NCBI GenBank assembly: GCA_044892505.1
Contig: CM097883.1
Coordinates: forward strand, 106,206,001 to 106,270,000
Reading direction: 5' to 3'
Length of the DNA: 64,000 nucleotides
DNA from: Schmidtea nova
Lineage: Eukaryota
Part shown: positions 4,675 through 35,558 of the stretch, piece after piece
Position numbering within the stretch: the first letter of the stretch is position 1
Layout: each line of letters begins with the position of its first letter
Translations under genes and position numbers: made by a program
The notes under the pieces: model-generated
The model's input: only the letters and a program-made list of their open reading frames with translations
Told to the model about the DNA's origin: nothing
The model's database searches: none

Positions 4675-5672
4675 CAATAGAGTTTTTCAAAAATAAAAGA
4701 TTTCTATTTTTAAATATTTGGTTATTTTTAAAGTTTTTTATTGTTTGTTTGTTTTATATAGGAACCTGTGTAAATATTAAATGTTTTTATATAGGGACTA
4801 GTATCATTTTTCAATTCATAATCGTTTGGTATTATNNNNNNNNNNNNNNNNNNNNNNNNNNNNNNNNNNNNNNNNNNNNNNNNNNNNNNNNNNNNNNNNN
4901 NNNNNNNNNNNNNNNNNNNNNNNNNNNNNNNNNNNNNNNNNNNNNNNNNNNNNNNNNNNNNNNNNNNNNNNNNNNNNNNNNNNNNNNNNNNNNNNNNNNN
5001 NNNNNNNNNNNNNNNNNNNNNNNNNNNNNNNNNNNNNNNNNNNNNNNNNNNNNNNNNNNNNNNNNNNNNNNNNNNNNNNNNNNNNNNNNNNNNNNNNNNN
5101 NNNNNNNNNNNNNNNNNNNNNNNNNNNNNNNNNNNNNNNNNNNNNNNNNNNNNNNNNNNNNNNNNNNNNNNNNNNNNNNNNNNNNNNNNNNNNNNNNNNN
5201 NNNNNNNNNNNNNNNNNNNNNNNNNNNNNNNNNNNNNNNNNNNNNNNNNNNNNNNNNNNNNNNNNNNNNNNNNNNNNNNNNNNNNNNNNNNNNNNNNNNN
5301 NNTAGATTGACAACGGAGATCCTTATGATTTTATACGTTAGGGTGATCTCGCCAACATAAAAACATTCCCCCGCTGACACCCATGATGCATCCCTAACTA
5401 CTCCTCATGTTGGTACTGTGTCAACGTTGTGAAATGACAAGGCAGGTGAGCAACCTTACGGCTACTATTCCCTTGTTTATTCACGGGTCCACCACTACCG
5501 ATAGAAGGTGTTTGTGGATTTCTTTCGGTCCCACTTATGCTCTTGTCTATTGTCCTAGGGTAATTTAATCTTAGCGCATCTGCTGTTCTTCATGAATCCG
5601 GGTTTTAGTTATATTCAATTCTCAGACATTCCACAAACAAACAAGACAAGTCAACTCATTCATTTTATACAT

Positions 5673-6254
5673 TTATTTATAGTTTAACAATACAGAGGGC
5701 CTAATTACATTTAGTAGTTCTTGCTCGGAGAGACCACTGAGCAAGTCTACCTCTATTCCTACGCGATCTGCATATGCGCGTCTCTCCCTGCGTTTTTTCG
5801 CTCCCAAGCGATTCCTTCGTTTGGTCCTCTGCGATCCTCGTGGTATAGTTGTGGTCATCTCGGTTGCCGTGGTTACGGTTATCTCTTTGTCGGTTTGCGT
5901 ACTCGTCGTCGCTGATGTCGAAGTTAACCATTTGTTGAAGGTACTCGTCCTAATCACTGGACGCAATTGCTCAACGATGAAATCTTGGGTCGACACCTTT
6001 TAATAATTGGCCAACTCTAACTTCAGGGCTGCGACCTCCCTTGCTTGTTCATCGATCGTTCGCTCCGCTCTGTATCGGGCCTGTAAGATGGCTTTAACCC
6101 TCTCAGGATTAAACCACGTTGCCTTAATCCGCTGGTGCTCCTCGTTCAGTTGTCTCAAGCGACTCTCGAGGACACGAGATCGTGCTCTATGTTCGCGTGC
6201 CTCTTGCTTGTAATTTCGAGTGGGATTTTCGTCCATATCTGAGTAATGTATCAT
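5673..6254 (-). pseudogene. LTR-encoded 193-aa coiled-coil/Arg-rich ORF, broken in this LTR by a TTA>TAA nonsense change at 6001
   Basis: The 84-aa and 107-aa ORFs here join into the intact 193-aa ORF at 31876-32457. Base 6001 is T here versus A at 32204. Confidence 0.9.
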
Positions 6255-6431
6255 TAACCAGGGTATTTATGCCTTGTTTGGTTTCTCAGTCCCTATTTTA
6301 TTGTTAAACAACTGCACCCTCATCCTTACTCATTCCACATACATCCAAAACCAAAACAAAACCCTTTTAAATGGATACATATATTTTTGATTTACAACAG
6401 ATGTTCGTACATTGGGGTGTCGTCCTCGTGA

Positions 6432-7067
6432 TCAATTGTATGGTCGTAACTCTTGATCGGCCGGGTTCTCGTCTCGGCGAATCCCTGTTTCATGGTATAG
6501 TTCGGGGGCCGGATTCCAACTCAGTTTGTTTTGATAAATGAACACCTCCCAGAGGCGAAGGTCTTTGGGCTCGGGGTGTTGATCCACGGAAATACTGCCT
6601 GGGGCGTTCGGGTAAACGAAGACTTCCCCAGTGTCACCACACCGAGGCCTGTCTAGCAGCAAATACCCGAGTTGACCGAATGCCTGCCCGGTCATCATTC
6701 CGGTGCTTAGTACCCAGCGGGGTTGTTGGGTTTCATCTACAAATTGATAGAACCATCTTTCGCATCCATCTTTGGTGGGGTTCGGAGAGGGCGTCCAATC
6801 GACATCGCCTTCCCACCTCAGCTGTAGTTGGAATGCACAGGCGGGAATACTTGCCGCTATGCTCATATGGGTCCTCGTCCATCGACGCAGGTGTCTACGT
6901 GCGGAGTTGAAAATTTGTCGTGGGGCCTCCTTCTCTCCTTGGATCTCAGTAGGTAATTTTTGTGTGATGACGGAGCGGATGCGCCGTTTCCTCCGTAGAA
7001 TGTACTCCTCTAATTTGACGGTTAGGGGTCCTACCGGCTCCTTCATGAGATATTCTGTTTTCCTCAT
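6432..7067 (-). CDS. LTR-encoded 211-aa protein of unknown function (3' LTR copy)
   Basis: ATG-started ORF, same protein as 32635-33270. Basic patch RRKRR; TTTCAG acceptor 6 nt before the ATG. Confidence 0.6.
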   Translation of the reverse strand: MRKTEYLMKEPVGPLTVKLEEYILRRKRRIRSVITQKLPTEIQGEKEAPRQIFNSARRHLRRWTRTHMSIAASIPACAFQLQLRWEGDVDWTPSPNPTKDGCERWFYQFVDETQQPRWVLSTGMMTGQAFGQLGYLLLDRPRCGDTGEVFVYPNAPGSISVDQHPEPKDLRLWEVFIYQNKLSWNPAPELYHETGIRRDENPADQELRPYN

Positions 7068-8732
7068 GTTGCTCTGAAACGGAATTTTAGGTTAACTGAC
7101 AGACTCTATCATCGACCATCGATTTTATGTCGATCAACCTACTTGGTTTATCGTCTATTAGCCGTAGGCCTTAGTAGCTCGCATATAATTTACTAGACCG
7201 TTGGTCGCGATGTTCATGTAGGTTGTGACTTTACCTAGGTGAGTTGATTCACTCCGCAATTTCAGACGGTTTTAGCTACGCTAATTTTGGCTTCTTATTT
7301 ACAATCAATTTATGTTACATTTAATTTTTCACCGATCATTTCCATTCACTCAACATAGTTCATTTACAGATCATCATCAGCAACTATCAAGGTTCTCGTC
7401 ACGGGGAAAATTTAGTCATCCCTTAGTCAACTGCTTTGTTGAGGGACCCACTAATTTTATCTACTATCGGGTCTGACTTTTCATGCCCTTAGTGGATTAT
7501 ATGTATATATCTGGCAGCTCATTCGATTCACGACTACCCCTTGGTGTTAATGTCTTTCGGCCGCGATGTTACGTTTTGCCTATCTCGATGCTCATCGACT
7601 TTTGATGTACCAGCACTCCTTGAAGGTATACCCCCTCATCAAGGTACTTCATGCATATATCTTCCCTTGCGAAATGAACTTTACCTTGAGTTGATTTATG
7701 GTCATTAACTGTCACCCGATACCCCGTCATCGTACTGTATAGCATTTATACTAGGCTATCGCTACCTTGATTTAGTTCATGATCATTAGGTCTTACTCGA
7801 TACCCTATGTGCATCCCCCTTTTCCCCTCATCAAGTATTTAGTAAACTTATGGTCCCGCCGCATCAGCACCTCACCACCGATAAGGTGTGTTGCGCTGAG
7901 AGGCCAAAGAATCCGTCAGGCTGCTAGGCCTCCGGAAAACCTTATTGATTTTATCATGATTATGATTATTATGAGGGTTTAAATAATTAACAATAAAACT
8001 CAACCATACTTGTATTTGGCTTCCAATCGATTTTACAATGTCTTCCGTAAGAGTGACTGTTGTACTGATTTACCTTCAGTAAAAATGACCTCCTATTTCT
8101 CTATTTTTACTGATTTTACTTCAGTATTTATACTCAACCGGTGTTGTTGGTCAGCCAATCAGCATCGAGTATGTGTGTATGTTTGCTTCATTATTTTGTG
8201 TTGCCGGCTTTTTGGTGCCTAACTCAACTCAATGATTTATTTGGTTAATCATGCGGTAAGTTTATTTTTGTATGATTTAATTTTTATTTGATTTTGTTTT
8301 AGCTCTTCGGTGACATCCGCCCACGCGCTGTCATATTCCGATTTTATTTGCTTCGCATGAGTGAGTTATGAAGATTTTTGTTGTTTTTATTAATACTCTA
8401 TTTCTTTTAGATGTTGCCGCCTATTTTATTACACTTTGGTGTTGGTAATTTATTTTGTTGTTATTCTGTTGTAAATTTATTTTATTGATTGTATATTATT
8501 TTTAGATGCTGCTCGATTTGGCTGGCCCAACATCACTCGGGGTCCCCTAAAATTGCGTCCCGCAATTACATGCATATACCTACATCAACATACATAAAAA
8601 GTTCGTGACAGAACTTACATGCCAAACCACATAAGGTGGTAGCTTTTATACACATTTTTACACATACACATTGTCATTGTCATGTTTATATTGTTACACA
8701 GTTCAATGTTTCTGGCTCATAGGGGTCGATTT

Positions 8733-9257
8733 TCAGGTCCTTTCACTGGATGACTGCATTTCGTATCGGGCTTGGATTTGTCGCAGATGACTTCTCATTC
8801 TTTGTTGGGTTTTGGCTTCTCTTTTGGCGCATCTACACATTATCGTTTGTTGTTGTTTGAGGCTTCTGATTCGGTACAGGGTATACGTGATCACTATGAT
8901 CAAGATGATTGTCAATATGGTCATTGTGACTATTCCCACGATGATCCATCTGTTTCGGATTTCGTATTCGATTTGGGTTTGACCTTTGATTGGCTTTAGG
9001 TGATCTTGAAATGTTCTATGGATTTCTCTGATCTTCTCGATTTGATTGAGTAGGGTTTGTAAGGGTTTGCGATGATCATGACTGATTCGCATTTGTCGGA
9101 TTAATTGTTTCAAGTCTTCTCTGACTTCGTTTAGTTGTTTTTCGATCTCCTGGGATATCTCATTTGACAGGGTTCTTTGGATTTCGGTTGTCGTACAGTT
9201 CGTGATTGCTGCTGTTAACATAATAGTTAGGATTGGTAGGGTTTTGAGCCAGTTCAT
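8733..9257 (-). CDS. Accessory 174-aa type I membrane protein (signal peptide, coiled-coil ectodomain, TM, basic tail)
   Basis: Hydrophobic N-terminus MNWLKTLPILTIMLTAAIT, heptad region, TM WIIVGIVTMTILTIILIIVITYTLY, then R/K-rich tail with CRC. Confidence 0.75.
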   Translation of the reverse strand: MNWLKTLPILTIMLTAAITNCTTTEIQRTLSNEISQEIEKQLNEVREDLKQLIRQMRISHDHRKPLQTLLNQIEKIREIHRTFQDHLKPIKGQTQIEYEIRNRWIIVGIVTMTILTIILIIVITYTLYRIRSLKQQQTIMCRCAKREAKTQQRMRSHLRQIQARYEMQSSSERT

Positions 9258-9330
9258 TTCTGATTATTCCACTGATTAATACAGGTTACATCGATTTGTA
9301 CATTTTTACACACGGATTTTTTGCCTCTTT

Positions 9331-10503
9331 TTACACATCCGTCTCCTCTGGTTCATGGAACCCTTCATCTTGGAGTTCCATTGGTGGTGGTGGTATAAAC
9401 GGTAACCACACCACTCTACTTCTCCACATTGCAATTTCGTCTTGATACGTTCGAGAGATTTGTATCTCTTCATCTAACAGATACTCCATATAGTCTGATT
9501 GTTCGCTCAGAGTTTCAATTTGTCTTTCCATTTCTTCCACTTTTCTCTTCAGGGCTTCTGTTTCTGTTGGTTCGGTTTCTATTTCTGGGGTTTCTTTCTC
9601 TGCTTTCAGGGTTATTATTTGTTGTTTCAGCTCCTCGTTTTCTTTCGTCAAATTCGTTATGTTTTCCTCGTAAGCTCGGTTTGATTCCGCATGTCTTTCT
9701 TTCACTGCTTTCAACTCCATTTTCTTTTGGGTCACTACTCCTTGATAGCCATTTACATCTCTTTCCAGGCTTTCTTTTTCCCTGATCAACTTTTGTCTTT
9801 CTGCTTCCTCTTTCTGTCTAATGCCTCGCATTTCTCCGTTTATTATCTGTATTTGCCATTGCGTTTTCTTTAGTTCCTTTGCTTGTTCTCGAATAAATCG
9901 CTGTCGTTTTCGACTCCATTCTTTGTTGGTCTGTTCTTGTCGCTTTCTCTGTTCCAATTCCTCTTTCAATTCGTCTATCTCTTGATACAATTTCCAATCT
10001 TCGCTGTGTGCTGTCCTTCTGATTATCTCTTTGGCTTCTTTATACACTCGTTTCGACTCCATCTTCCAATGTCTCGCTTGAGCCTTGATTGCTAGTATTT
10101 TTACCTCCATCTTTTCCTCTTGTTTCTCCCTCTCTTCTCTTCGCGTTTTCATCATATTTTTATAATGTTCTGCTTGTTTCCTCATCAACTGATAGGTCTC
10201 TTCTATCTTCTGTCGACTTCGTGAATTCGTTCCTTTTAGCTTCTCTATTTGTGTTGTCAGTTGTACTATCTCTTTATTTACTTCCTCGAGTTCTAGTTGA
10301 TATAACTCCATTCGTCTTTTGCATTTTAGTTTCTCGTAGAAATTGTTTGTCATCACTTCGTGTAATTCTCTGGTTCTTTGTTCTACTTCCACTTTACATC
10401 TCTTTTCGATTTCTCTTTCGATTTCTCTTTCTATTGCTTCTTGTTCGTTTGACATCTCGTTTCTCGTTTCATCTTCGATTACATGTTCATTTGCGTTTTC
10501 CAT
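9331..10503 (-). CDS. Accessory 390-aa long coiled-coil protein, unknown function
   Basis: E/K/R/Q-rich heptads almost throughout. C-terminus WLPFIPPPP...ETDV. Confidence 0.75.
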   Translation of the reverse strand: MENANEHVIEDETRNEMSNEQEAIEREIEREIEKRCKVEVEQRTRELHEVMTNNFYEKLKCKRRMELYQLELEEVNKEIVQLTTQIEKLKGTNSRSRQKIEETYQLMRKQAEHYKNMMKTRREEREKQEEKMEVKILAIKAQARHWKMESKRVYKEAKEIIRRTAHSEDWKLYQEIDELKEELEQRKRQEQTNKEWSRKRQRFIREQAKELKKTQWQIQIINGEMRGIRQKEEAERQKLIREKESLERDVNGYQGVVTQKKMELKAVKERHAESNRAYEENITNLTKENEELKQQIITLKAEKETPEIETEPTETEALKRKVEEMERQIETLSEQSDYMEYLLDEEIQISRTYQDEIAMWRSRVVWLPFIPPPPMELQDEGFHEPEETDV

Positions 10504-10592
10504 TCTGTAATTTACAAATTTACCCTTGTTATATTATACGTTTATTGTTGTCGTTGATTTTTACACTTTATTTACAGGGTCGTTCACTCTGA

Positions 10593-12005
10593 CTACTCCA
10601 ACCATCCTTTCGTCGACTTCGTGTTCATCGCTGCTGTACTTGTTTTCTTTTCGATTTCCAACTCTACGTATAGGTTGTCGTCGTACAACATTTCCCACAT
10701 TTTTTGGTGTGGTATGAATTTTGGTTCTCCTGTTGCTAGTGAACATTCTGTGGTTGGTCTTTTGTAAGCTTCATGCTTACCATCAATTTTGAATATCCTC
10801 ACGATCGTTTCTTTCGAGTTTTTGACCCTCATTACCGCCTTTGTCTCTAGCGGCCATTCTAATATGTCGTCGTAACCCCCTTTACACAACGCAAAGAATA
10901 ATGACACATGCGTTTCCTTTCCTGATCCATCTTCATTTGGATAAATTCTCATCCGGACTTTGTATCCGTTTTTCCACAGATAGAATGGTGGACTTGTTAC
11001 TGACACTTGACTTCCTGCTTTTGCTGCTGCGAACCTTTCGTTGAAGTTCTTGATTTTCCATACATATGGTGCAACAGGTAAACTCTCAATATCCTCTGCA
11101 TCTCGTATCCACATTTGATGTCGCACGTTTACTTCTTTTACCAATGTCTCTATGACTTTGATTTTCTCCATCATTTTCTCTCTGGTGAGCTCGAATTGCT
11201 CTCTCGTTTCCAGTAATAACTCCGTCATTATCCTCTGAGATTCAATTTCTTTCCTCAGTTTCTGTATGGTTTGTTCCATTCCGTTCAAATTTTCTGTTAA
11301 CATCTCTGCGTGTTGTACCGTCTCTGTTTCTAAATGCTCTTTCATTTCTTTGCTCGTTTTCTTTACTACACATCCTTGTTTGCTCCATACGCACTTTCTT
11401 GGCCTTGCTTCGCACTGCTCCCAATGTTCTTTCAACATCACCTCTTCTCTGGCTCCACAATTACTTGGACAAATTCCTCTGAATTTTCCGCACACTTTCT
11501 CTTCTGCTACGTTGAGATGCTCTGTTACAATTACTTCTCTCGTCTCTCTTTGTTCGCAGTATTGACACTCTATTATCTCTGCCTTGCACTCATCCTTGTG
11601 ATTTTTCGACTGCTTGATGGTTATCGTCTGTTGACACTTTTCACATATCGCTTTCTTGTTTTCGCATTTCTCCAGATGTTGTCTTAGCTCGATTATTTGT
11701 CCTTTCCATTCACATGGTTGGTTTATACATTCTGTTTTTATCTTCCAGATCTCCTTTTGTATTGCTTTGTCTGGTTTCGTCTCGTTGATTAGTAGTTTAT
11801 CGCCACACTCGGGACACTTTCTTGTCTCACTTTCACTGATTATTTGCAATATACACTTGGTGCACATCCTGCATCCACATTCCGTTTGCCTCGGTTTTAA
11901 CAGTAGATTTTTACACTTTACACACGTCACATTTACTCCCCATTGTCGATTCTCTCTTCTTAGAATCTCGATCGTTTGGTAATCTGCTTCGCTTTCTGCT
12001 CTCAT
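10593..12005 (-). CDS. Full-length intronless TRAF-family protein (RING, TRAF zinc fingers, coiled coil, MATH/TRAF-C), 470 aa
   Basis: RING CVKC..KPRQTECGCRMCTKC..CPEC; TRAF fingers C..PCEWKG..L..HLEKC, CPSNCG..EHWEQC, CVWSKQGC..EHL; MATH YVWKI.NF, SPPFY...GYKVRMRIYPN.DG.GK.THVSLFF..CKG.YDDILEWP, G.PKFI, DDNLYV. Confidence 0.92.
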   Translation of the reverse strand: MRAESEADYQTIEILRRENRQWGVNVTCVKCKNLLLKPRQTECGCRMCTKCILQIISESETRKCPECGDKLLINETKPDKAIQKEIWKIKTECINQPCEWKGQIIELRQHLEKCENKKAICEKCQQTITIKQSKNHKDECKAEIIECQYCEQRETREVIVTEHLNVAEEKVCGKFRGICPSNCGAREEVMLKEHWEQCEARPRKCVWSKQGCVVKKTSKEMKEHLETETVQHAEMLTENLNGMEQTIQKLRKEIESQRIMTELLLETREQFELTREKMMEKIKVIETLVKEVNVRHQMWIRDAEDIESLPVAPYVWKIKNFNERFAAAKAGSQVSVTSPPFYLWKNGYKVRMRIYPNEDGSGKETHVSLFFALCKGGYDDILEWPLETKAVMRVKNSKETIVRIFKIDGKHEAYKRPTTECSLATGEPKFIPHQKMWEMLYDDNLYVELEIEKKTSTAAMNTKSTKGWLE

Positions 12006-12095
12006 TCTACAACAATATTTACATCAATTTCCCCATATTTTTGATTTTTTCTGGTTCTTTATTTACACGTATTTACACAATTTTCCGCTTATTCA

Positions 12096-12446
12096 CTATA
12101 CATCCTCAGTTGAATCTGGCTCTGGATACACGTCTATCTCATTTACAATCCAGCTCGTCCAACTATCCGGTATCTCTTCCTCTTCATGTCTCGTTAATCG
12201 GTCAATTTCCTCTGCTTGCCAATTGTTCACTTCATTCAATGTTCGGTTCTCGTTCTGTAATTCGTTTATCTGTATTTGTTGGATCTCGATTTTGTTCATT
12301 GCTTCGAAATTACAGTTATAACTTTCGGTTAATAATTGCGTTTTGGCCGTCAACTGGCTCTGTAATTCGTTTATTGTTCTGGCTAGCAGGTCACATTGCA
12401 CTTTCCATCTTGTCATCATCGACATCTCTGTGGTTTCTTGATTCAT
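12096..12446 (-). CDS. Accessory 116-aa coiled-coil protein with acidic, Trp-containing tail
   Basis: ATG ORF with repeated INELQ heptads, placed co-directionally between other accessory genes. TAG acceptor 7 nt before the ATG. Confidence 0.65.
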   Translation of the reverse strand: MNQETTEMSMMTRWKVQCDLLARTINELQSQLTAKTQLLTESYNCNFEAMNKIEIQQIQINELQNENRTLNEVNNWQAEEIDRLTRHEEEEIPDSWTSWIVNEIDVYPEPDSTEDV

Positions 12447-13937: not shown

Positions 13938-16900
13938 TCATTGGTCTTGGATGTTTACTAACGTCATCACGCTGATATCTATGTCCTCCATGATTCTCTT
14001 AATGAGAATTAATATTAATGCTACACATATCAATTCTGGTTGGAATGTTAATTTGCCCGCTGAATTTTTGGTTATTCTTTCTTTCTCCGTTCGGTTTCCG
14101 ATTCCTTCTTCTGCTTCAGATTGATTCTTCCCTTTCTCCGATTCCACTTCTGTTCTTCTCGTTGTCTCTTCGCTTCTTTTCCCAATCCATTTCTGTATCT
14201 TCAGCGCTTCTGTTGCTTTATATAATTGACATGCAGTTACTTGAGGTGCTTTTGGTTCTCCTCTCTGCTTTATTGCGCATATTATGTATGACTTTTCTTT
14301 CTCCAATCCTTTGATTTGGATGACGTCTCGCTTCAGATCTGACAATATACACTTCAGCGTGTCGTTTTTCTTCAGGTTTTCTTTCCAGCATATTCTTTCG
14401 TATACTTCGTTTCCTCTGATTATTTCCAGCGTGACGTATTGTTTCTTGGCTTCTCCTTGTCCGATGATTGTTATCAATATCGCAATACACAACATTTCTG
14501 GTCTCAAAAGTAGACTTCCTGTTCGTTTTCCATAATTCGTACGTTCGTCTTTCGTTCCTCTGTTTTCTCGTTCTTCTGCTTCTCCTTTCTTGTCGTTTCT
14601 TGTTGGCTTTGGTTCTTCCTGTCTTTCTTTTTCATTATCCTCTGTTCTTTTGTTGTCATTGTCTTCGTTGTTCTTTTCGTTGTTACTTTTGTCGTCGAAA
14701 TCTCTGTAACCACCCCCTGGTCCTTTGAAAATGTCGTCCTCGACATTAATTTCTTTAATCAATCTTTCATACGCTTGAACCGCGAGTGTGCTAGACTCGA
14801 ATTCCCGTATTTCCATATCTTTGGATGGTTCTATGTCTTTTAGTCTACTTTGCTTTATCGTTTCTTTGGCATCTGTCCATTCATTCACATATTTTCTGAA
14901 CAAGTCTTTCCATCTTCCCGTTCGTTCGGGTTCCTTTGGATTGTTCGTGAATTTCAAATCTCTTCTCTTCAGGAATTCTTCAACTATCTCTGGCTTTTTG
15001 TGTCTTAATAACGCGCTTCTGATACACCAATTCTGATTCTGTTCCATATGGTCATTGATCTTGAATGCCGGTTCCTTGGTGATCGGATTCACCCATGTTA
15101 GTAATGCTCTTGTCTTCTCTATGTCGTGTATCATTACTGTTAGACTGAAGTTCTTTACGTTATTTGCCAGGTATTCGATATCCTCTTGTTTATTGATGGA
15201 CTTTATGAACTTGATCATCTCGAAGTTGTTCCACTGTATTGCGATATCTATGATGGAATTGTTCTTTCCATTTTTCCCTTCGATTTTGGCTCCTGCTTCG
15301 TATAACTCGTGTAGCACTTTCAATTTCGTCTTCTTTCTTGCTGCGATTATCATGATTGTGTCTCCGTTATCATCAACCATATTCATATCTGCTTCGCACT
15401 TTACCATTGCTTTTGTTATTTCTAGCGCTTCGTTTTCTTTCTTTCGACGTAATGCCCAGTGTATCGGCAATCTCCCATCCTTTGATAATAGGAATGTTAC
15501 TGGCATTTGATTTTTGATCGTTTCTATGTCACTCTCGTTATAATCTCCTTGTGCGTATCTGTGCACTTTCTCTGTAATTGCTCCTAGTATCTCCAACGAG
15601 TTTTTATTCTCCTTGAATTCTGATAGTCTTTCCTGCGCTTTTGCTACGATTGCGTCTAGTCTCTCTTGATTATCAGCTTTTGCATTGAACAACACTGCTT
15701 TGCTTCTTATTCGCGTTTGCATCTGTTTCATTCGTTGGTCTTGATACACTGCTTGTCTGAAGAACTGTCCATATTTCAATGCTTCTATCAGCTCTTTATA
15801 TCGCTTGCTTATTTCTTTGTGCTGCTTTTGGATGTCATAAAAATGTTCGAAGCTCATATCCGGATTCCATTGCTTATCACACCATTTCTTGATTAATCCG
15901 AATAGTTCTTTCTTCCTGTCTTCCAACTTGTATTCTCTTGGGTTTTCGCTAACCCGTAACGTATCTCTCGCTATTAACACTGCAAGTGTTTTTGGATCGT
16001 ATGTTACCTCTAGTAGATGTTTCAGTAACGCATTTTCTCCCCTTATGAACACTTCATTACAATCTATGACCCACGAATCTCCTTCTGGTCGTTTCCACTT
16101 TAGCAATATTCTCCAGGTTTTACTGTTTCTTACTCCGATTGCTTGTTTCATGATCGATCCTCTAGTTAGTTCATCGATTTCCCACGTGGCATTTTCCGTA
16201 ATATACTTTAGTATTCGGTGATTTGCTCTGTCAATTGCATGATTCAAGAATGTTCGTCCTTCTTTATCCTTTGCCATCCAATTCGATCTGGTGTTTCCGA
16301 ATAACTTGATTATTTCATCGTTTCTTCCATGAATTGCTATCATCATTAGTGGAGTGATTCCTTCCCAATTCACTTTGTCAATTTCTCCTCCACCTTCGAG
16401 TATCATCTCTACGATCTCTTTCACCTTCTCGTTTCCCCCGTGCTTGATTGCATTGTGCAACGCGGTATTACCGTCTTTGTCTTGTAGATTCAATGTTTGA
16501 GGGATTTCCTCTAGCAGCGTTCTTGTTATTGGATGTGCTGTTCTATCCTTCGCATACTCCATTACATTTTTTCGAACTTCTGACAGTATATTGAAATCGT
16601 GCCACCATTTCCATTCTGGTATAATTTCTCTGGTTTTCTTTGCCAGTTCTTTGATATCTATTATCTCCCTTCGGTTGTCTTCTAGACTTGTTTGCGGCTT
16701 TTGTTGTACTCGCAACATATTGATTCTCGCCGTCTGTGATCTTGTCATCACCCGTTTCTCTGGTGATAGAGTTGCTGTCTTTGGTATTTTCCTGCATCGA
16801 CATGCATTCACGTATATTGGTCTTACCAATGGATTGTTCACCAATCGTACTCGCACATTATTTTCATTTACTGTTGTGATTTCGTATGGCCCTTTGCCTG

Positions 16901-27476: not shown

Positions 27477-28354
27477 CCCGATTCCACTATCTTGGAATAC
27501 TGTACTAGTTTTCTTTGCTTCTAGTTCACCACTTGTTTCTGAATTCGACTCTTCTTCTTTACTACTCTCTGTTTCGTTATCTCTTGATTTGCTTCTTGTT
27601 CTGTTTTCCCTGACTAGTTCACTGTCTATCGTCTCTACTTCGTTTTGAACTTCTAGATCTTCTGGGGTTTCTTCTTGGTTCTCTTTATTACTCGAATTAT
27701 CGCTGATCTCTACTTGTTTGTTCTTTTGTTGCTTAGGCTTGTTACCTGTTCTTGTTCTTTTTGCTGCTTTTCTTTCGGCTTCCGTTAAGATTGGTATTAT
27801 ACCTGATCTTGTTTCTCGTCCCTCAATTTTGTCTATTCCTCAATTTCTTATATTCTCCACTGATTTTCTACTCTGCTTTTGCTTTGCTTCTTCTTTGATT
27901 TGTTTCCTTTGATTGCTCTGACTGCTAGATTGCCTTGAATTGTTTGATTGATTTGTTTCCTTAAAACAAATAATCACTTACACGATACGTCCCCGTTATC
28001 GTGTTTCTCGTCCCTCTCACGGGTGTAGTCATAATTCATGAAGATCCCCATTTTTCCCATTTCCCTTGATTTTAAGTCTATTTAAATTATCTATGCAGTC
28101 GTATCAATTATCTATTCTTTATCAAATACACCAATTACTTTTCCCCAGTTTCCCAATTACTTTGTCGCTCAGCGCTCTTATTATTCCCTTTACTTTTCTC
28201 AGGCTTCTCTGGCTCTGAGTTCAAATTTTCCCCTTATCTGTCGACTACTCTGTTTCTCAACTATTCGCTTTATTTCCTATTCACACTACGTTTACTACTT
28301 CATTTCAATTCTCATCTCTACTCACCTTTAATTCAAGCGACATCTCTCGTTGGC

Positions 28355-28816
28355 CTGCTGGGTTTTCTAGTCAGCGCTTTTAATCTCACCTTTTATCTCG
28401 AACTCTGTTTCTCTCAACTTCACTCATTATCTCATTAGCCTGCTGGGTTTTCCAGTCAGCGCTTTTAATCTCACCTTTTTCTTCTGCTTCATTATTCTCG
28501 ACCTCAATTGTCGTTTCATTAGCCTGCTGGGTTTTTCCAGTCAGCGCTCTTATTATCCACCCTTTATCTCTTCACTGTCGACTTTTACCTGCTCTTTACT
28601 CCGATGATCATCACTTTTGACCTGCTGGGTCTTCCAGTCAGCGTCCTCAATTTTACCACTTTATTATTACTCACTTTTATTCTCTCGATCTTTCCTGATC
28701 GTTGCCATTGACCTGCTGGGTTTTCCAGCTAGCGTCTTTACCACTTCTCCCGTCTTAACAAACCGGTTTCATTTTATTCTCATCGAATCTCATGGTCTGC
28801 TGGGTTTTCCAGTCAG
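28355..28816 (-). repeat. Six spaced copies of a 20-nt hairpin motif in the leader upstream of gag
   Basis: CTGCTGGGTTTTCCAGTCAG variants at 28355, 28440, 28524, 28622, 28713 and 28797. Confidence 0.9.
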
Positions 28817-29144
28817 CACCCTTCACTTACTCACTTTACTTTACTACTCCTCTGTATGCATACTTTCACCTCATTAGGCCACATAATCAGCTTTACTCGC
28901 ATTTATCAATACCTAGGTGCGCACCTTCAACTCTCTCGTTATTAATTCGGTTTCTTTCAACCCTTATTCCTCATTATTCGCTATTCATTTTCACTATTCA
29001 TCATTTATCCTCATTATCACTTATTCATTTCCATTATCGCTTGTTGATCTTCACTATCCGGATAGTTTTATACGTAATTTAGTCCTCATCTGCCTCACTT
29101 CGTCGTCTTTCTCGTGGGCTTTTACTCAATATTTTATTTCGAAC

Positions 29145-29780
29145 GAGAACTATGCTCACCGTTGAGAACTATGCTCACTGACGAGAACTATGCTCACTGA
29201 CGAGAACTATGCTCACTGACGAGAACTATGCTCACTGACGAGAACTATGCTCACCGACGAGAACTCTGCTCGCTGACGAGAACTATGCTCACTGACGAGA
29301 ACTATGCTCACTGACGAGAACTATGCTCACTGACGAGAACTATGCTCACTGACGAGAACTATGCTCACTGACGAGAACTATGCTCACTGACGAGAACTAT
29401 GCTCACTGACGAGAACTATGCTCACTGGCAAAACATGGTTGTTATGAGGATTCTGCTTACTGATGGAAACTCTTTGCTCCGGGGACTATGTTCCCCGATG
29501 AGAACTATGCTCACTGATGGTGACTACAGGAATTATGTTTCCTGATGAGAACTATGCTCACTACGATGACTATGTTTATTGATGAGAACTACGCTCACTG
29601 ATGAGGACTATGTTCGCTGGTCTTGTATTTATTAATGAGAACTCTGCTCACTACGGGATTTATATTTACGGACGAGAACTATGCTCACTATGATGTTGTG
29701 TTTTATGACGAGACCTACGCTCACTAGGATGTTATTTTTATGACGAGACCTATGCTCACTATGAGACCTATGCTCACGAA
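29145..29780. repeat. 19-bp tandem repeat (GAGAACTATGCTCACTGAC): 15 contiguous units (29145-29429), then degenerate spaced units
   Basis: Counted directly; unit starts at 29145+19n through 29411. Confidence 0.97.
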
Positions 29781-30478
29781 CGAAAACTCGAAATATCATC
29801 TCTCAGTGGTTGCATGTGTTGCTTCGGGATGTTCCTCCCAGTGGTCACTTATGCTTCTTCGGAGAATCTATTGTCGCGTTTCGTTAAGTTCTATCTTTCA
29901 AGAACTATGGGCAAATCCTTTCTCTTTAGGACCCCTTTTATCATTTCCTTTCTTTCAAGGAATTCGTTTAATCCTCGAGTTTTCCCTTTCGCTCGGTTCA
30001 TCTATTACACCCCTTTATTCTGTTATCTATTCATCGACTTCTCTACTTGATTTTACTTTATGCGAGCTGATTACGTGCCTTTCATCATATACCACATTTC
30101 TCTACTCATCTTACTCATTTCATTGCTTTATCTCTCTCTTTACTGATCAGTTTTAACATCCTTTTTTTATAGTTTTTCTGCGCGCGCCTAAACCTCGTTG
30201 AGTTGTCCCTACCTTTCACCCCAACCAAAATATATAAAAAGATCGCATTGGTCCACTGATGCACGATGTGGTGATCAATCACATCACAAGAGCTTTCCAA
30301 TATCCGCGATTGGCCCCTTTCTACACATTTCGGGTAAGTTGATCAGTTGGTTCCCCCCAATGGGTGCTTATCGGACTACTCGTGAGTAGCTCATAATTAC
30401 TTAGGTCATTTTTACCAAATCATCTTTGAACCCTCATAATTTCAATAACAACTGCACTTGCTCAAAACTTTATTTCTA

Positions 30479-30937
30479 CTACAAGTACACTGTTATTTTC
30501 TCGGATACGGGAAGGTTGCACATAGGACATCGTTCATTTATTTTACATTCATTACAGAATCGGAAATGCCCACATGGCAACAACATTATCTGTATCTTAT
30601 TCATTTCACAGATATAACACATCAGATATTGTCTCGTATGTTCTGTTGTTATTCTTATCCACTCATCGTGTTTTGTTGTTAACTGTTGTTCTAGCCTGTG
30701 GCACTCGATGTTCATCTCAGGGTTGTTTAATCTTTCTCTATACCATTGATATCGTGTTGCTGTATCCACTGTGTTCTTATTCTCACTTAAGCTCATCATC
30801 CTTTCAGCTCTTTCTGTGTTGTTTGTCGGTTCGTGATATTCTCCTACCTCGAGTCTTTTTAACTTTCTCGTTATTGTCTCCACTGTCTCGTGGTTTGTTT
30901 CGAAAAACGTTTGCATTTCTTTTATTTTGTTCTCCAT
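30479..30937 (-). CDS. Accessory 152-aa coiled-coil protein with C-terminal IAP/XIAP-type RING finger (no BIR)
   Basis: CYICEMNKIQIMLLPCGHFRFCNEC..NERCPMCNLPVSEKITVYL-stop matches the terminal C3HC4 RING of IAP/MDM2-like ligases. Confidence 0.85.
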   Translation of the reverse strand: MENKIKEMQTFFETNHETVETITRKLKRLEVGEYHEPTNNTERAERMMSLSENKNTVDTATRYQWYRERLNNPEMNIECHRLEQQLTTKHDEWIRITTEHTRQYLMCYICEMNKIQIMLLPCGHFRFCNECKINERCPMCNLPVSEKITVYL

Positions 30938-31466
30938 CCCCTGAATGAATTCTCATTAATTTTGTTATCGATTTTTATTTATTGTTTATCATTCCTATTC
31001 TATGGTAGCCCTACTGTTCGCTTTCTGTTGTTCTGTTTTACGTCGTTACTTGCGTATCCCCCCGTGTTCTTGAATGTCGCCCCGACATGATCATTGTTAG
31101 TTGCTCACACTCATACCATTTTCATGCACACTTTTCAGCATACTTTTACCTTACGTCATGCATACTTTTCATCACTTTTCATACTGTTACTCCACATACT
31201 ATTCATCATACTTCATTCGTCCTCATACTTCCATTCCATTATCATTCATACTTTCATTCTCATGCATACTTTCATCATGTTCATCAATCTCATTATTTTA
31301 CACTCATACTTTTATTTATTATTTTTCAACCCGATTCATTCTTGCTTCAGGACCCACAGTTATTATTTACTTTACTTTTCCTCGCTAAATTTAATTTCAT
31401 CCCGGTTCAGGCGCTCTAAACTGTCCGCAGATATCGAATTCACTTTTTCCCACAAAGATCGATTTA

Positions 31467-31484
31467 ATCCCGGCTGAGCCCCCA
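31467..31484 (-). promoter_or_regulatory. Primer-binding site complementary to tRNA-Pro 3' end
   Basis: Minus strand TGGGGGCTCAGCCGGGAT versus the classical tRNA-Pro PBS TGGGGGCTCGTCCGGGAT (16/18); lies just inside the 5' LTR. Confidence 0.9.
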
Positions 31485-31875
31485 AATTTATGCTGGTGTG
31501 TTGGTTAGATTGACAACGGAGATCCTTATGATTTTATACGTTAGGGTGATCTCGCCAACATAAAAACATTCCCCCGCTGACACCCATGATGCATCCCTAA
31601 CTACTCCTCATGTTGGTACTGTGTCAACGTTGTGAAATGACAAGGCAGGTGAGCAACCTTACGGCTACTATTCCCTTGTTTATTCACGGGTCCACCACTA
31701 CCGATAGAAGGTGTTTGTGGATTTCTTTCGGTCCCACTTATGCTCTTGTCTATTGTCCTAGGGTAATTTAATCTTAGCGCATCTGCTGTTCTTCATGAAT
31801 CCGGGTTTTAGTTATATTCAATTCTCAGACATTCCACAAACAAACAAGACAAGTCAACTCATTCATTTTATACAT

Positions 31876-32457
31876 TTATTTATAGTTTAACAATACAGAG
31901 GGCCTAATTACATTTAGTAGTTCTTGCTCGGAGAGACCACTGAGCAAGTCTACCTCTATTCCTACGCGATCTGCATATGCGCGTCTCTCCCTGCGTTTTT
32001 TCGCTCCCAAGCGATTCCTTCGTTTGGTCCTCTGCGATCCTCGTGGTATAGTTGTGGTCATCTCGGTTGCCGTGGTTACGGTTATCTCTTTGTCGGTTTG
32101 CGTACTCGTCGTCGCTGATGTCGAAGTTAACCATTTGTTGAAGGTACTCGTCCTAATCACTGGACGCAATTGCTCAACGATGAAATCTTGGGTCGACACC
32201 TTTAAATAATTGGCCAACTCTAACTTCAGGGCTGCGACCTCCCTTGCTTGTTCATCGATCGTTCGCTCCGCTCTGTATCGGGCCTGTAAGATGGCTTTAA
32301 CCCTCTCAGGATTAAACCACGTTGCCTTAATCCGCTGGTGCTCCTCGTTCAGTTGTCTCAAGCGACTCTCGAGGACACGAGATCGTGCTCTATGTTCGCG
32401 TGCCTCTTGCTTGTAATTTCGAGTGGGATTTTCGTCCATATCTGAGTAATGTATCAT
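31876..32457 (-). CDS. LTR-encoded 193-aa protein: coiled coil, Thr-rich linker, Arg-rich motif, Leu-rich tail (likely start at second Met, 32439)
   Basis: Intact ORF with RGSQRTKRRNRLGAKKRRERR. CTCAG acceptor 2 nt before the second ATG; AATAAA overlaps the stop. Confidence 0.65.
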   Translation of the reverse strand: MIHYSDMDENPTRNYKQEAREHRARSRVLESRLRQLNEEHQRIKATWFNPERVKAILQARYRAERTIDEQAREVAALKLELANYLKVSTQDFIVEQLRPVIRTSTFNKWLTSTSATTSTQTDKEITVTTATEMTTTIPRGSQRTKRRNRLGAKKRRERRAYADRVGIEVDLLSGLSEQELLNVIRPSVLLNYK

Positions 32458-32634
32458 TAACCAGGGTATTTATGCCTTGTTTGGTTTCTCAGTCCCTATT
32501 TTATTGTTAAACAACTGCACCCTCATCCTTACTCATTCCACATACATCCAAAACCAAAACAAAACCCTTTTAAATGGATACATATATTTTTGATTTACAA
32601 CAGATGTTCGTACATTGGGGTGTCGTCCTCGTGA

Positions 32635-33270
32635 TCAATTGTATGGTCGTAACTCTTGATCGGCCGGGTTCTCGTCTCGGCGAATCCCTGTTTCATGGTA
32701 TAGTTCGGGGGCCGGATTCCAACTCAGTTTGTTTTGATAAATGAACACCTCCCAGAGGCGAAGGTCTTTGGGCTCGGGGTGTTGATCCACGGAAATACTG
32801 CCTGGGGCGTTCGGGTAAACGAAGACTTCCCCAGTGTCACCACACCGAGGCCTGTCTAGCAGCAAATACCCGAGTTGACCGAATGCCTGCCCGGTCATCA
32901 TTCCGGTGCTTAGTACCCAGCGGGGTTGTTGGGTTTCATCTACAAATTGATAGAACCATCTTTCGCATCCATCTTTGGTGGGGTTTGGAGAGGGCGTCCA
33001 ATCGACATCGCCTTCCCACCTCAGCTGTAGTTGGAATGCACAGGCGGGAATACTTGCCGCTATGCTCATATGGGTCCTCGTCCATCGACGCAGGTGTCTA
33101 CGTGCGGAGTTGAAAATTTGTCGTGGGGCCTCCTTCTCTCCTTGGATCTCAGTAGGTAATTTTTGTGTGATGACGGAGCGGATGCGCCGTTTCCTCCGTA
33201 GAATGTACTCCTCTAATTTGACGGTTAGGGGTCCTACCGGCTCCTTCATGAGATATTCTGTTTTCCTCAT
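32635..33270 (-). CDS. LTR-encoded 211-aa protein of unknown function (5' LTR copy)
   Basis: Same protein as 6432-7067; the one difference seen inside it (6783/32986 area) is synonymous. Confidence 0.6.
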   Translation of the reverse strand: MRKTEYLMKEPVGPLTVKLEEYILRRKRRIRSVITQKLPTEIQGEKEAPRQIFNSARRHLRRWTRTHMSIAASIPACAFQLQLRWEGDVDWTPSPNPTKDGCERWFYQFVDETQQPRWVLSTGMMTGQAFGQLGYLLLDRPRCGDTGEVFVYPNAPGSISVDQHPEPKDLRLWEVFIYQNKLSWNPAPELYHETGIRRDENPADQELRPYN

Positions 33271-35558
33271 GTTGCTCTGAAACGGAATTTTAGGTTAACT
33301 GACAGACTCTATCATCGACCATCGATTTTATGTCGATCAACCTACTTGGTTTATCGTCTATTAGCCGTAGGCCTTAGTAGCTCGCATATAATTTACTAGA
33401 CCGTTGGTCGCGATGTTCATGTAGGTGGTGACTTTACCTAGGTGAGTTGATTCACTCCGCAATTTCAGACGGTTTTAGCTACGCTAATTTTGGCTTGTTA
33501 TTTACAATCAATTTATGTTACATTTAATTTTTCACCGATCATTTCCATTCACTCAACATAGTTCATTTACAGATCATCATCAGCAACTATCAAGGTTCTC
33601 GTCACGGGGAAAATTTAGTCATCCCTTAGTCAACTGCTTTGTTGAGGGACCCACTAATTTTATCTACTATCGGGTCTGACTTTTCATGCCCTTAGTGGAT
33701 TATATGTATATATCTGGCAGCTCATTCGATTCACGACTACCCCTTGGTGTTAATGTCTTTCGGCCGCGATGTTACGTTTTGCCTATCTCGATGCTCATCG
33801 ACTTTTGATGTACCAGCACTCCTTGAAGGTATACCCCCTCATCAAGGTACCTCATGCATATATCTTCCCTTGCGAAATGAACTTTACCTTGAGTTGATTT
33901 ATGGTCATTAACTGTCACCCGATACCCCGTCATCGTACTGTATAGCATTTATACTAGGCTATCGCTACCTTGATTTAGTTCATGATCATTAGGTCTTACT
34001 CGATACCCTATGTGCATCCCCCTTTTCCCCTCATCAAGTATTTAGTAAACTTATGGTCCCGCCGCATCAGCACCTCACCACCGATAAGGTGTGTTGCGCT
34101 GAGAGGCCAAAGAATCCGTCAGGCTGCTAGGCCTCCGGAAAACCTTATTGATTTTATCATGATTATGATTATTATGAGGGTTTAAATAATTAACAATAAA
34201 ACTCAACCATACTTGTATTTGGCTTCCAATCGATTTTACAATGTCTTCCGTAAGAGTGACTGTTGTACTGATTTACCTTCAGTAAAAATGACCTCCTATT
34301 TCTCTATTTTTACTGATTTTACTTCAGTATTTATACTCAACCGGTGTTGTTGGTCAGCCAATAAGCATCGAGTATGTGTGTATGTTTGCTTCATTATTTT
34401 GTGTTGCCGGCTTTTTGGTGCCTAACTCAACTCAATGATTTATTTGGTTAATCATGCGGTAAGTTTATTTTTGTATGATTTAATTTTTATTTGATTTTGT
34501 TTTAGCTCTTCGGTGACATCCGCCCACGCGCTGTCATATTCCGATTTTATTTGCTTCGCATGAGTGAGTTATGAAGATTTTTGTTGTTTTTATTAATATT
34601 CTATTTCTTTTAGATGTTGCCGCCTATTTTATTACACTTTGGTGTTGGTAATTTATTTTGTTGTTATTCTGTTGTAAATTTATTTTATTGATTGTATATT
34701 ATTTTTAGATGCTGCTCNNNNNNNNNNNNNNNNNNNNNNNNNNNNNNNNNNNNNNNNNNNNNNNNNNNNNNNNNNNNNNNNNNNNNNNNNNNNNNNNNNN
34801 NNNNNNNNNNNNNNNNNNNNNNNNNNNNNNNNNNNNNNNNNNNNNNNNNNNNNNNNNNNNNNNNNNNNNNNNNNNNNNNNNNNNNNNNNNNNNNNNNNNN
34901 NNNNNNNNNNNNNNNNNNNNNNNNNNNNNNNNNNNNNNNNNNNNNNNNNNNNNNNNNNNNNNNNNNNNNNNNNNNNNNNNNNNNNNNNNNNNNNNNNNNN
35001 NNNNNNNNNNNNNNNNNNNNNNNNNNNNNNNNNNNNNNNNNNNNNNNNNNNNNNNNNNNNNNNNNNNNNNNNNNNNNNNNNNNNNNNNNNNNNNNNNNNN
35101 NNNNNNNNNNNNNNNNNNNNNNNNNNNNNNNNNNNNNNNNNNNNNNNNNNNNNNNNNNNNNNNNNNNNNNNNNNNNNNNNNNNNNNNNNNNNNNNNNNNN
35201 NNNNNNNNNNNNNNNNNNNNNNNNNNNNNNNNNNNNNNNNNNNNNNNNNNNNNNNNNNNNNNNNNNNNNNNNNNNNNNNNNNNNNNNNNNNNNNNNNNNN
35301 NNNNNNNNNNNNNNNNNNNNNNNNNNNNNNNNNNNNNNNNNNNNNNNNNNNNNNNNNNNNNNNNNNNNNNNNNNNNNNNNNNNNNNNNNNNNNNNNNNNN
35401 NNNNNNNNNNNNNNNNNNNNNNNNNNNNNNNNNNNNNNNNNNNNNNNNNNNNNNNNNNNNNNNNNNNNNNNNNNNNNNNNNNNNNNNNNNNNNNNNNNNN
35501 NNNNNNNNNNNNNNNNNNNNNNNNNNNNNNNNNNNNNNNNNNNNNNNNNNNNNNNNNN

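What the first reader, a model, noticed from the sequence alone, without database searches (positions are those of the whole stretch)
5303..34717. Giant, young, enveloped gypsy element carrying a cell-death / TNF-NF-kB control kit
Seen: one ~29.4-kb element with ~3.2-kb LTRs differing at only ~7 positions by eye and an intact 13.5-kb ORF. It also carries a Bcl-2-like domain, a full TRAF, an IAP-type RING, ankyrin repeats, ubiquitin-like domains, FN3/TM modules and an envelope. Known: Bcl-2, IAP, TRAF and IkB-like ankyrin proteins are core regulators of apoptosis and TNFR/NF-kB signalling and are mimicked by large DNA viruses (pox, herpes, baculo). Typical gypsy elements are 5-10 kb with only gag-pol(-env). 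Giant >30-kb gypsy families (Burro) are described from the planarian Schmidtea mediterranea, so this may be a relative; I cannot tell how much of this cargo is already reported. Inference: a complex endogenous-retrovirus-like element that keeps host cells alive and dampens immune signalling while it spreads.
Basis: partly seen in the sequence, partly recalled or inferred. Interest (0 to 1): 0.95.

Follow-up and report, generated by a model that had tools for sequence, protein, structure and literature searches.

The report
Burro-type giant planarian gypsy retroelement
This is an intact, recently inserted copy of a giant gypsy-like retrovirus-like element of the Burro kind already described from planarian flatworms; its envelope, TRAF, IAP-type RING and ankyrin parts are real, but this cargo has been reported before.

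Summary
The core observation holds. On the minus strand, two 3,212-bp repeats differ at 7 positions with no indels. They enclose an open 4,512-codon gag-env-pol reading frame and at least five accessory ORFs. Tools confirm three CCHC knuckles and a class III viral fusion glycoprotein in frame between gag and protease (Pfam E 7e-71). They also confirm Ty3-type PR-RT-RNaseH-IN (PDB Ty3 Gag-Pol, E 6e-118), ankyrin repeats, a full TRAF (RING, TRAF zinc fingers, coiled coil, MATH) and a 152-aa ORF ending in an XIAP/cIAP-type RING.

The Bcl-2-like, ubiquitin-like and FN3 calls got no support from Pfam, PDB sequence or profile searches, a 1.84-billion-protein phmmer scan, or two low-confidence AlphaFold models. 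They remain untested, not refuted. No BIR domain is present.

Both outer LTR ends abut N runs, so termini, target-site duplication and exact length cannot be seen.

The architecture matches the published Burro/GYPSM1 family of Schmidtea mediterranea (PMC6431247). That paper already reports the in-frame env, MATH_TRAF, BIR, BCL2-like, SUMO-like and ankyrin motifs, and the same "meddles with apoptosis and ubiquitination" idea.

Verdict: a real but already known kind. The possible new detail is the gene arrangement, with TRAF as a separate 3' gene and a RING-only ORF upstream of gag.

The parts
31506..34717 (-). 5' LTR, visible part (outer end runs into N at 34718)
   Evidence: 3,212-bp direct repeat, 7 mismatches, 0 gaps
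5303..8514 (-). 3' LTR, visible part (outer end runs into N at 5302)
   Evidence: a short purine run and a TG start lie about 18-35 nt upstream in element orientation
31466..31484 (-). Primer-binding-site-like 19-mer just downstream of the 5' LTR
   Evidence: Read; it starts with the complement of CCA and has the layout of a tRNA 3' end. Inference only: no tRNA was available for comparison.
30479..30937 (-). Upstream accessory ORF, 152 aa, C-terminal IAP-type RING, no BIR
   Evidence: PF13920 E 2.5e-9; XIAP/cIAP/BIRC7 RING hits; no BIR zinc pattern in any frame
27477..30478 (-). About 3-kb leader without long sense ORFs, with tandem repeats (19 bp x15, 85 bp x2.7, 35-37 bp)
13938..27476 (-). 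Single intact 4,512-aa Gag-cargo-Env-PR-RT-RH-IN-Ank polyprotein ORF (0 internal stops)
26577..27476 (-). Gag-like N-terminus with three CCHC zinc knuckles (residues 1-300)
   Evidence: PF00098 E 8e-11; knuckles read
23979..25784 (-). Cargo block of unknown function (residues 565-1166), conserved with the one database relative, P0008
   Evidence: phmmer E 7e-54; BLASTP 31-36% identity. P0008 has a MATH domain inserted where this element has none.
22662..23159 (-). Candidate Bcl-2-like all-helical region (residues about 1440-1605), unverified
   Evidence: No Pfam, PDB or library hit; low-confidence helical model; Foldseek negative
20727..22556 (-). Env: signal-like stretch, class III fusion glycoprotein ectodomain, TM (residues 1641-2250)
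   Evidence: PF24664 E 7.4e-71; TM at 2216-2245
19893..20165 (-). Aspartic protease
   Evidence: PF00077 E 1e-8; active-site Asp-Thr-Gly read
18177..19229 (-). Reverse transcriptase and RNase H
   Evidence: PF00078 E 2e-36, PF17917 E 5e-38; Ty3 RT 4ol8 E 5e-88
17277..17852 (-). Integrase (zinc-binding and catalytic core)
   Evidence: PF17921 E 3e-21, PF00665 E 4e-11; Ty3 Gag-Pol 7q5b E 6e-118
15192..16502 (-). Two blocks of ankyrin repeats fused after integrase
   Evidence: PF12796 E 1e-18 and related families; generic ankyrin PDB hits
13941..14519 (-). Polyprotein C-terminus: hydrophobic segment, Cys/Trp module, hydrophobic segment
12570..13832 (-). Accessory ORF, 420 aa: two Cys/Trp modules, helix, TM, tail; fold unknown
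   Evidence: no Pfam or PDB hit
10593..12005 (-). Accessory ORF, 470 aa: full-length TRAF-like protein
9331..10503 (-). Accessory ORF, 390 aa: Glu/Lys-rich coiled-coil protein, no family hit
8733..9257 (-). Accessory ORF, 174 aa: small signal-helix-TM-tail membrane protein
4836..5302 (.). N run hiding the 3' LTR outer end and the host junction (not filled)
34718..35558 (.). N run hiding the 5' LTR outer end and the host junction (not filled)

Best explanation
The region is one full-length, recently inserted copy of a Burro-type giant Ty3/gypsy (Metaviridae-like) endogenous retrovirus-like element of a dugesiid planarian, lying on the minus strand.

Shown: an LTR pair; a Ty3-type PR-RT-RH-IN; a gag with three zinc knuckles; a mononegavirus-type class III fusion glycoprotein in the same frame between gag and protease; ankyrin repeats fused after integrase; and separate ORFs for an IAP-type RING protein, a complete TRAF, a coiled-coil protein and membrane proteins. 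All share one strand and one base composition.

Inferred: transcription starts in the 5' LTR and a tRNA primes at the PBS-like site. The single polyprotein is threaded through the ER membrane by the internal signal-like segment and the TM, so that the fusogen faces the lumen while Gag and Pol stay cytosolic, and the element's own protease cuts it. The long-resident host-derived modules (TRAF adaptor/E3, RING E3, ankyrin, possibly a Bcl-2-like fold) act on ubiquitin- and TRAF-dependent signalling and on cell death in the cells that express the element.
For: LTR pair 99.78% identical. Intact 4,512-codon ORF. Domain order and E-values. Ty3 Gag-Pol and Ty3 RT are the best solved relatives. Env PF24664 E 7e-71 with a signal-like stretch and a TM. 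TRAF and IAP-type RING. Uniform GC 0.37-0.43 and A-rich coding strand across pol and every accessory ORF, against flank GC 0.29. Tandem repeats in the leader. The only library relative of the cargo block (P0008) carries MATH inside the polyprotein, as described for Burro-1. Published Burro/GYPSM1 description: 25-kb internal region, 4,873-aa ORF1, three CCHC knuckles, env in frame between gag and pol, MATH_TRAF, BIR, BCL2-like, SUMO-like, ankyrin, accessory ORFs that in some relatives are subdomains of the polyprotein, tandem repeats (PMC6431247). Flanks are over 70% A/T, as reported for Schmidtea genomes (PMC11410931).
Against: No sequence of a published Burro element could be compared, so family membership rests on architecture, not identity. 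The host was not identified. BIR, dUTPase-like and SUMO-like motifs reported for Burro-1 were not detected here, and the Bcl-2-like call is unverified. P0008 is only 31-36% identical. LTR termini and the target-site duplication are hidden by N. All functional steps are inference.
Confidence: 0.85

Rival explanations
1. A separate giant env-carrying gypsy lineage, in a planarian or another AT-rich invertebrate, that gained TRAF, RING and ankyrin cargo independently of Burro.
For: Only 31-37% identity to the few database relatives. TRAF is a stand-alone 3' gene, not an in-frame MATH or an upstream ORF as in the two published layouts. No BIR, dUTPase-like or SUMO-like hit. GAG-ENV-POL elements with class III fusogens occur in several phyla and are not monophyletic (PMC13524379).
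Against: The cargo block is collinear with P0008 on both sides of P0008's MATH insert. The same rare combination is present: env in frame, three knuckles, TRAF/MATH, ankyrin after integrase, leader repeats. Independent assembly of all of these is unlikely.
Confidence: 0.09
2. The accessory ORFs are host genes, or passengers from a one-off capture, that happen to lie between two LTRs and are not part of a replicating element.
For: Only one copy is visible; no second copy or fragment is in the window. Sister copies could not be examined.
Against: All ORFs are intronless, tightly packed, on one strand, and compositionally indistinguishable from pol. The Cys/Trp module of the 420-aa ORF recurs inside the polyprotein. 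TRAF/MATH is also inside a relative's polyprotein. The literature reports the same cargo across Burro families.
Confidence: 0.04
3. Assembly artefact: a collapsed or misjoined repeat in which the N runs mark scaffold joins, so the 'element' is a chimera of different copies.
For: Both outer repeat ends stop exactly at N runs. Burro elements are a known assembly problem (PMC11410931, PMC13238120).
Against: There is no N inside the 29.4 kb. The internal sequence is one continuous open frame with intact catalytic motifs. A PBS-like site sits just inside the 5' LTR. The repeats differ at 7 sites, so they are not the same collapsed read pile.
Confidence: 0.02

Closest known systems
[quoted passage not shown] 2018; Arkhipova & Yushenova 2019, PMC6431247)
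   Same: Giant gypsy-like LTR element with one huge polyprotein. Typical gag with three CCHC knuckles. Env in frame between gag and protease, with hits to mononegavirus fusion glycoproteins. TRAF/MATH and ankyrin cargo, accessory ORFs, and tandem repeats.
   Different: The polyprotein here is 4,512 aa, not 4,873. MATH is not in the polyprotein but part of a complete TRAF gene 3' of pol. No BIR, only a RING-only ORF upstream of gag. dUTPase-like and SUMO-like motifs were not detected with Pfam. No sequence comparison was possible.
Burro-like element of Dugesia (Girardia) tigrina (PMC6431247)
   Same: TRAF/MATH is encoded by an accessory ORF, not inside the polyprotein.
   Different: There the accessory ORF is upstream, ORF1 is 5,140 aa with two knuckles and midasin-like similarity. 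Here it is downstream, with three knuckles.
GAG-ENV-POL 'errantiviruses' with class III (gB-type) fusogens in Platyhelminthes, Nematoda and Bryozoa (PMC13524379)
   Same: Ty3/gypsy pol with a class III fusogen placed between gag and pol.
   Different: Those are ordinary-sized elements described as separate ORFs and without signalling cargo. Here the fusogen matches the Monjiviricetes G-type Pfam family and is fused in frame.
Ogre/Tat plant gypsy elements and foamy-like fish ERVs with accessory ORFs
   Same: Oversized LTR elements with long LTRs and extra ORFs.
   Different: No env in frame and no TRAF, RING or ankyrin cargo. Different hosts and clades.
Host-mimic genes of large DNA viruses (IAP, Bcl-2, ankyrin, TRAF-binding proteins of baculo-, pox- and herpesviruses)
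   Same: Captured host regulators of cell death and ubiquitin signalling carried by a mobile or viral genome. This is a likeness of working principle only.
   Different: This is a retroelement, and no homology to the viral versions was found: the RING hits are to cellular IAPs and the TRAF hits to cellular TRAFs.

Membership tests
Ty3/gypsy (Metaviridae) LTR retroelement | Pol order PR-RT-RNaseH-IN, with RT and IN closest to Ty3 | tested here: met
   Ty3 Gag-Pol 7q5b E 6e-118 and Ty3 RT 4ol8 E 5e-88
Ty3/gypsy (Metaviridae) LTR retroelement | Flanking direct LTRs | tested here: met
   3,212 bp, 7 mismatches; outer ends masked
Ty3/gypsy (Metaviridae) LTR retroelement | PBS next to the 5' LTR, PPT next to the 3' LTR, TG..CA termini | tested here: inconclusive
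   PBS-like 19-mer at 31466-31484; only a 6-nt purine run near the 3' LTR; a candidate 6-nt terminal inverted repeat. No tRNA to compare.
Ty3/gypsy (Metaviridae) LTR retroelement | Target-site duplication | not testable with these tools
   Both junctions lie under N runs, which may not be filled
Burro giant gypsy family (planarians) | Giant size (internal region up to 25 kb, total about 30 kb) | tested here: met
   Visible span 29,415 bp; about 23 kb between the repeats
Burro giant gypsy family (planarians) | One giant polyprotein with env in frame between gag and protease | tested here: met
Burro giant gypsy family (planarians) | Cargo: TRAF/MATH and ankyrin | tested here: met
   TRAF as a separate ORF
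Burro giant gypsy family (planarians) | Cargo: BIR, BCL2-like, SUMO-like, dUTPase-like motifs | tested here: inconclusive
   No BIR. No Pfam hit for the other three at E<=10. The published calls used HHpred/CDD, which are not on hand.
Burro giant gypsy family (planarians) | Sequence kinship to published Burro-1 to -4 / GYPSM1 | not tested
The indirect link is through P0008.
Burro giant gypsy family (planarians) | Host is a dugesiid planarian | not testable with these tools
   Flank GC 0.25-0.30 fits; exact look-ups found nothing
TRAF | N-terminal RING, TRAF zinc fingers, coiled coil, C-terminal MATH | tested here: met
IAP (BIRC) | At least one BIR domain | tested here: not met
   No BIR in Pfam scans and no BIR zinc pattern in any frame. 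Only the RING is IAP-like, so this is not an IAP.
Bcl-2 family | Bcl-2 fold / BH motifs recognised by profile or structure | tested here: inconclusive
   Pfam, PDB and library searches negative. The model is all-helical but pLDDT 54, and Foldseek is negative.
Ubiquitin-like (SUMO/Rad60-SLD) | Beta-grasp domain recognised by profile | tested here: inconclusive
   No hit at E<=10 for three candidate segments, apart from an RA-like domain at E 0.13
Fibronectin type III | FN3 profile or fold match | tested here: inconclusive
   The three-copy module is real, but there is no FN3 hit and the model is unusable
Class III viral fusion glycoprotein (Monjiviricetes G type) | Profile match over the ectodomain, plus signal and TM anchor | tested here: met
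   PF24664 E 7.4e-71, profile positions 243-579 in the best stretch, two stretches; TM. No solved-structure or word-index hit.

The most novel reading that the evidence does not exclude
This copy may represent a Burro lineage whose gene plan has not been described. It would be a retroelement with six or more accessory genes around one gag-env-pol frame: a RING-only IAP-type E3 upstream of gag; a complete stand-alone TRAF; a coiled-coil protein; a small type-I membrane protein; and a thrice-repeated Cys/Trp module on membrane anchors, all 3' of pol. That would be a complexity comparable to complex retroviruses. It would also show that the TRAF module moved between in-polyprotein and free-gene states within the family.
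Probability: 0.25. Interest if true: 0.5.

Novelty: already known. Interest (0 to 1): 0.3.

Why it matters
Burro elements make up a visible share of planarian genomes, are expressed in differentiated tissues and are held down by the SMEDWI-2 piRNA pathway (PMC8532177). An apparently intact young copy with an open 13.5-kb frame, a viral fusogen and host-derived TRAF and RING genes is useful annotated material. It bears on how retroelements acquire envelope genes and signalling cargo. It is not a new kind of element: the cargo list and the 'tinkerer with apoptosis and ubiquitination' idea were published in 2007-2019. What this window adds is a clean layout in which TRAF is a complete separate gene, and a record of which domain calls do and do not survive HMM and structure tests.

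Tried and rejected
- Exact look-ups of five element proteins and of the neighbouring WD40 ORF found nothing, so the host was not identified.
- Word-index protein searches returned only distant TRAFs for the TRAF ORF. They returned nothing for the cargo region of the polyprotein or for env.
- The library-wide phmmer scan of residues 480-1640 gave a single hit. No alignment deep enough for AlphaFold could therefore be built.
- Both AlphaFold models were single-sequence and of low confidence. The one Foldseek run on the first was uninformative. I ran no further search on the second.
- A profile of the three Cys/Trp modules against PDB and Pfam gave nothing.
- Rfam and tRNA scans of the window were empty.
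- No second Burro-like fragment is in the window.
- Grohme et al. 2018 is not held by the paper library, and the eLife paper's supplements are not held.
- IkB-like ankyrin was rejected as a specific call: the hits are generic ankyrin repeats, with Bcl-3 only one of many.
- 'IAP' was rejected as a family call because no BIR is present.


Full report
**Observation.** The window holds one direct repeat pair, 5303-8514 and 31506-34717. Each copy is 3,212 bp, and they differ by 7 mismatches with no gaps, 99.78% identity. Between them, on the minus strand, lies an ORF of 4,512 codons (13938-27476). At 40% GC a frame that long would stay open by chance with probability about 1e-127.

The element has GC 0.38-0.46 and a strongly A-rich coding strand. 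The flanks have GC 0.18-0.33 and no skew.

The left repeat begins directly after an N run (4836-5302), and the right repeat ends directly at another (34718-35558). The repeat alignment is therefore cut by N at both ends, and 3,212 bp and 29,415 bp are minima. No LTR terminus, host junction or target-site duplication can be seen. I did not fill these runs.

Just inside the visible blocks there are three weak signals:
- a 19-nt primer-binding-site-like stretch (31466-31484, minus strand) that begins with the complement of CCA and has the layout of a tRNA 3' end;
- near the 3' LTR, a short purine run;
- a candidate 6-nt terminal inverted repeat.

They suggest that the true LTR is only some tens of bases longer than the aligned block, and that the N runs start just inside the outer LTR ends. 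This is inference.

**Anatomy (minus strand, 5' to 3').**
- 5' LTR.
- PBS-like site.
- A 152-aa ORF (30479-30937).
- A 3-kb leader without long sense ORFs but with tandem repeats, for example 19 bp x15.
- The polyprotein.
- ORFs of 420, 116, 470, 390 and 174 aa.
- 3' LTR.

**Polyprotein.**
- A gag-like N-terminus with three CCHC knuckles (residues 235-291).
- About 1,350 residues with no family hit.
- A signal-like hydrophobic stretch (about 1641-1663).
- A viral fusion glycoprotein ectodomain (PF24664 Monjiviricetes_fusion, E 7.4e-71) and a TM segment (2216-2245).
- Aspartic protease, RT, RNase H and integrase, with their catalytic motifs visible in the translation.
- Two blocks of ankyrin repeats.
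- A C-terminal piece with two similar hydrophobic segments around a Cys/Trp module.

The best solved relatives of pol are the Ty3 Gag-Pol polyprotein (7q5b, E 6e-118) and Ty3 RT (4ol8, E 5e-88). The element is therefore Ty3/gypsy. I found no stops or frameshifts in any called gene of the element (count 0). Without relatives I cannot say whether any accessory ORF is truncated.

**Cargo calls that hold.**
- The 470-aa ORF is a complete TRAF, with RING, TRAF zinc fingers, coiled coil and MATH. Its MATH domain hits TRAF1/5/2/3 at E about 1e-25, and its RING-zinc-finger part hits TRAF6 at E 8e-13.
- The 152-aa upstream ORF ends in a RING of family PF13920 (E 2.5e-9). Its best solved relatives are the RING domains of XIAP, cIAP1/2 and BIRC7. 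No BIR exists in any frame of the window, so it is an IAP-type RING protein, not an IAP.
- The ankyrin repeats are real but generic; Bcl-3 is only one hit among hundreds.

**Cargo calls that do not hold up, or stay open.**
- *Bcl-2-like region (residues about 1425-1640).* There is no Pfam hit at E<=10 and no PDB sequence hit. A phmmer scan of 1.84 billion representative proteins also found nothing there. A single-sequence AlphaFold model is all-helical (nine helices) but has pLDDT 54. Foldseek against the PDB gave only designed helical repeats at E>0.6 and no Bcl-2 protein.
- *Candidate ubiquitin-like segments.* No Pfam or PDB support, and they are not repeats of one another.
- *'FN3' module.* A roughly 90-aa unit with invariant Cys-Trp, Tyr and Cys positions is real. 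It occurs twice in the 420-aa ORF and once at the polyprotein's C-terminus. Neither its members nor its profile hit FN3, and the model of the 420-aa ORF has pLDDT 41.

These three calls are untested, not refuted. The failures trace to the lack of homologues for an alignment. The families I had in mind are Bcl-2, SUMO/Rad60-SLD and fibronectin type III. None came back as a named hit.

**Relatives.** The cargo region is nearly an orphan. Its one library relative is P0008 (882 aa, a UniParc/MetaClust entry without a name).
- P0008 residues 29-549 and 772-854 align with polyprotein residues 565-1069 and 1089-1166 at 31-36% identity.
- Between those two stretches P0008 carries a MATH domain. That domain is 31% identical to the MATH of the window's separate TRAF gene.

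So the TRAF/MATH module sits inside the polyprotein in one relative and is a free, complete gene here. Three other unnamed proteins share the RING-zinc-finger-coiled-coil part of the TRAF ORF at 36-37% identity. All element ORFs have the same base composition as pol. That composition argues for long residence in the element, not for recent capture.

**What is known.** Arkhipova and Yushenova (PMC6431247) summarise Burro (Grohme et al. 2018) and GYPSM1 (Jurka 2007) of Schmidtea mediterranea. Their description covers:
- thousands of copies, with an internal region of up to 25 kb;
- a 4,873-aa ORF1 with a typical gag and three CCHC knuckles;
- MATH_TRAF_C, BIR, ankyrin, BCL2-like, SUMO-like and dUTPase-like motifs;
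- env in frame between gag and pol, with hits to mononegavirus fusion glycoproteins;
- tandem repeats;
- accessory ORFs that in other members are subdomains of the polyprotein.

The authors already suggest that Burro meddles with host apoptosis and ubiquitination. BURRO1 is expressed in intestine and other differentiated cells and is repressed by SMEDWI-2 (PMC8532177). GAG-ENV-POL gypsy elements with class III fusogens are also reported from Platyhelminthes (PMC13524379). The finding is thus a member of a described family.

Against the two layouts I could read about, this copy differs in five ways:
- a 4,512-aa polyprotein;
- TRAF as a full gene 3' of pol;
- a RING-only ORF upstream of gag;
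- no BIR;
- no detectable dUTPase-like motif.

I could not read the description of Burro-2 to -4, because Grohme et al. is not held. This layout may already be in print.

**Mechanism.** Domain identities and order are shown. The following are inferred:
- tRNA-primed reverse transcription;
- flavivirus-like threading of the single polyprotein through the ER membrane, with the fusogen lumenal and Gag and Pol cytosolic;
- self-cleavage by the aspartic protease;
- modulation of TRAF- and ubiquitin-dependent signalling and of cell death by the accessory proteins.

The 0.22% LTR divergence and the open frames indicate a recent insertion. No planarian substitution rate is at hand, so I give no age.

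- I also ran no pattern scan of the viral collection.
- In my working thoughts I recalled a few short consensus motifs from memory as leads: Bcl-2 BH motifs, the tRNA T-loop and FN3 strand patterns. I also used generic zinc-ligand spacing patterns for RING and BIR in two scripts.
- None of the remembered letters was sent as a query or counted as evidence. The RING was then confirmed by Pfam and PDB. I flag this as a slip against the rule on sequences from memory.

**Verdict.** Interest is modest.

Noticed in passing
window 1738-4674 (+): A 978-aa ORF encodes a protein-primed family-B DNA polymerase (PF03175, E 1e-32). It is probably a Maverick/Polinton-like fragment next to the element, and it is bounded by N runs at 1185-1525 and 4836-5302.
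   Followed up: no
window 35559-36477: A satellite-like tandem array with 35-46-bp units lies directly after the right-hand N run.
   Followed up: no
window 37824-38711 (+): A 295-aa WD40 beta-propeller ORF, probably a host exon. Its exact product is not on record in the assembly index.
   Followed up: partly
window 6432-7067 and 32635-33270 (-): Each LTR carries an identical 211-aa sense-strand ORF with no Pfam hit. A second LTR ORF has 193 aa in the 5' copy and 107 aa in the 3' copy. Whether either is a gene is unknown.
   Followed up: partly
window 28341-29761 (-): The leader between the RING ORF and gag holds several tandem repeat arrays: 19 bp x15, 85 bp x2.7 and 35-37 bp units. This matches the 'TR' marks drawn for Burro in the literature.
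   Followed up: no
window 22490-22560 (-), polyprotein residues about 1640-1663: The hydrophobic stretch about 35 residues after the candidate Bcl-2-like region could serve both as that region's tail anchor and as the signal sequence of the fusion glycoprotein. This is inference only.
   Followed up: no
window 1185-1525 and 61481-61641: Two further N runs of irregular length (341 and 161 nt) lie away from the element. They were not filled.
   Followed up: no
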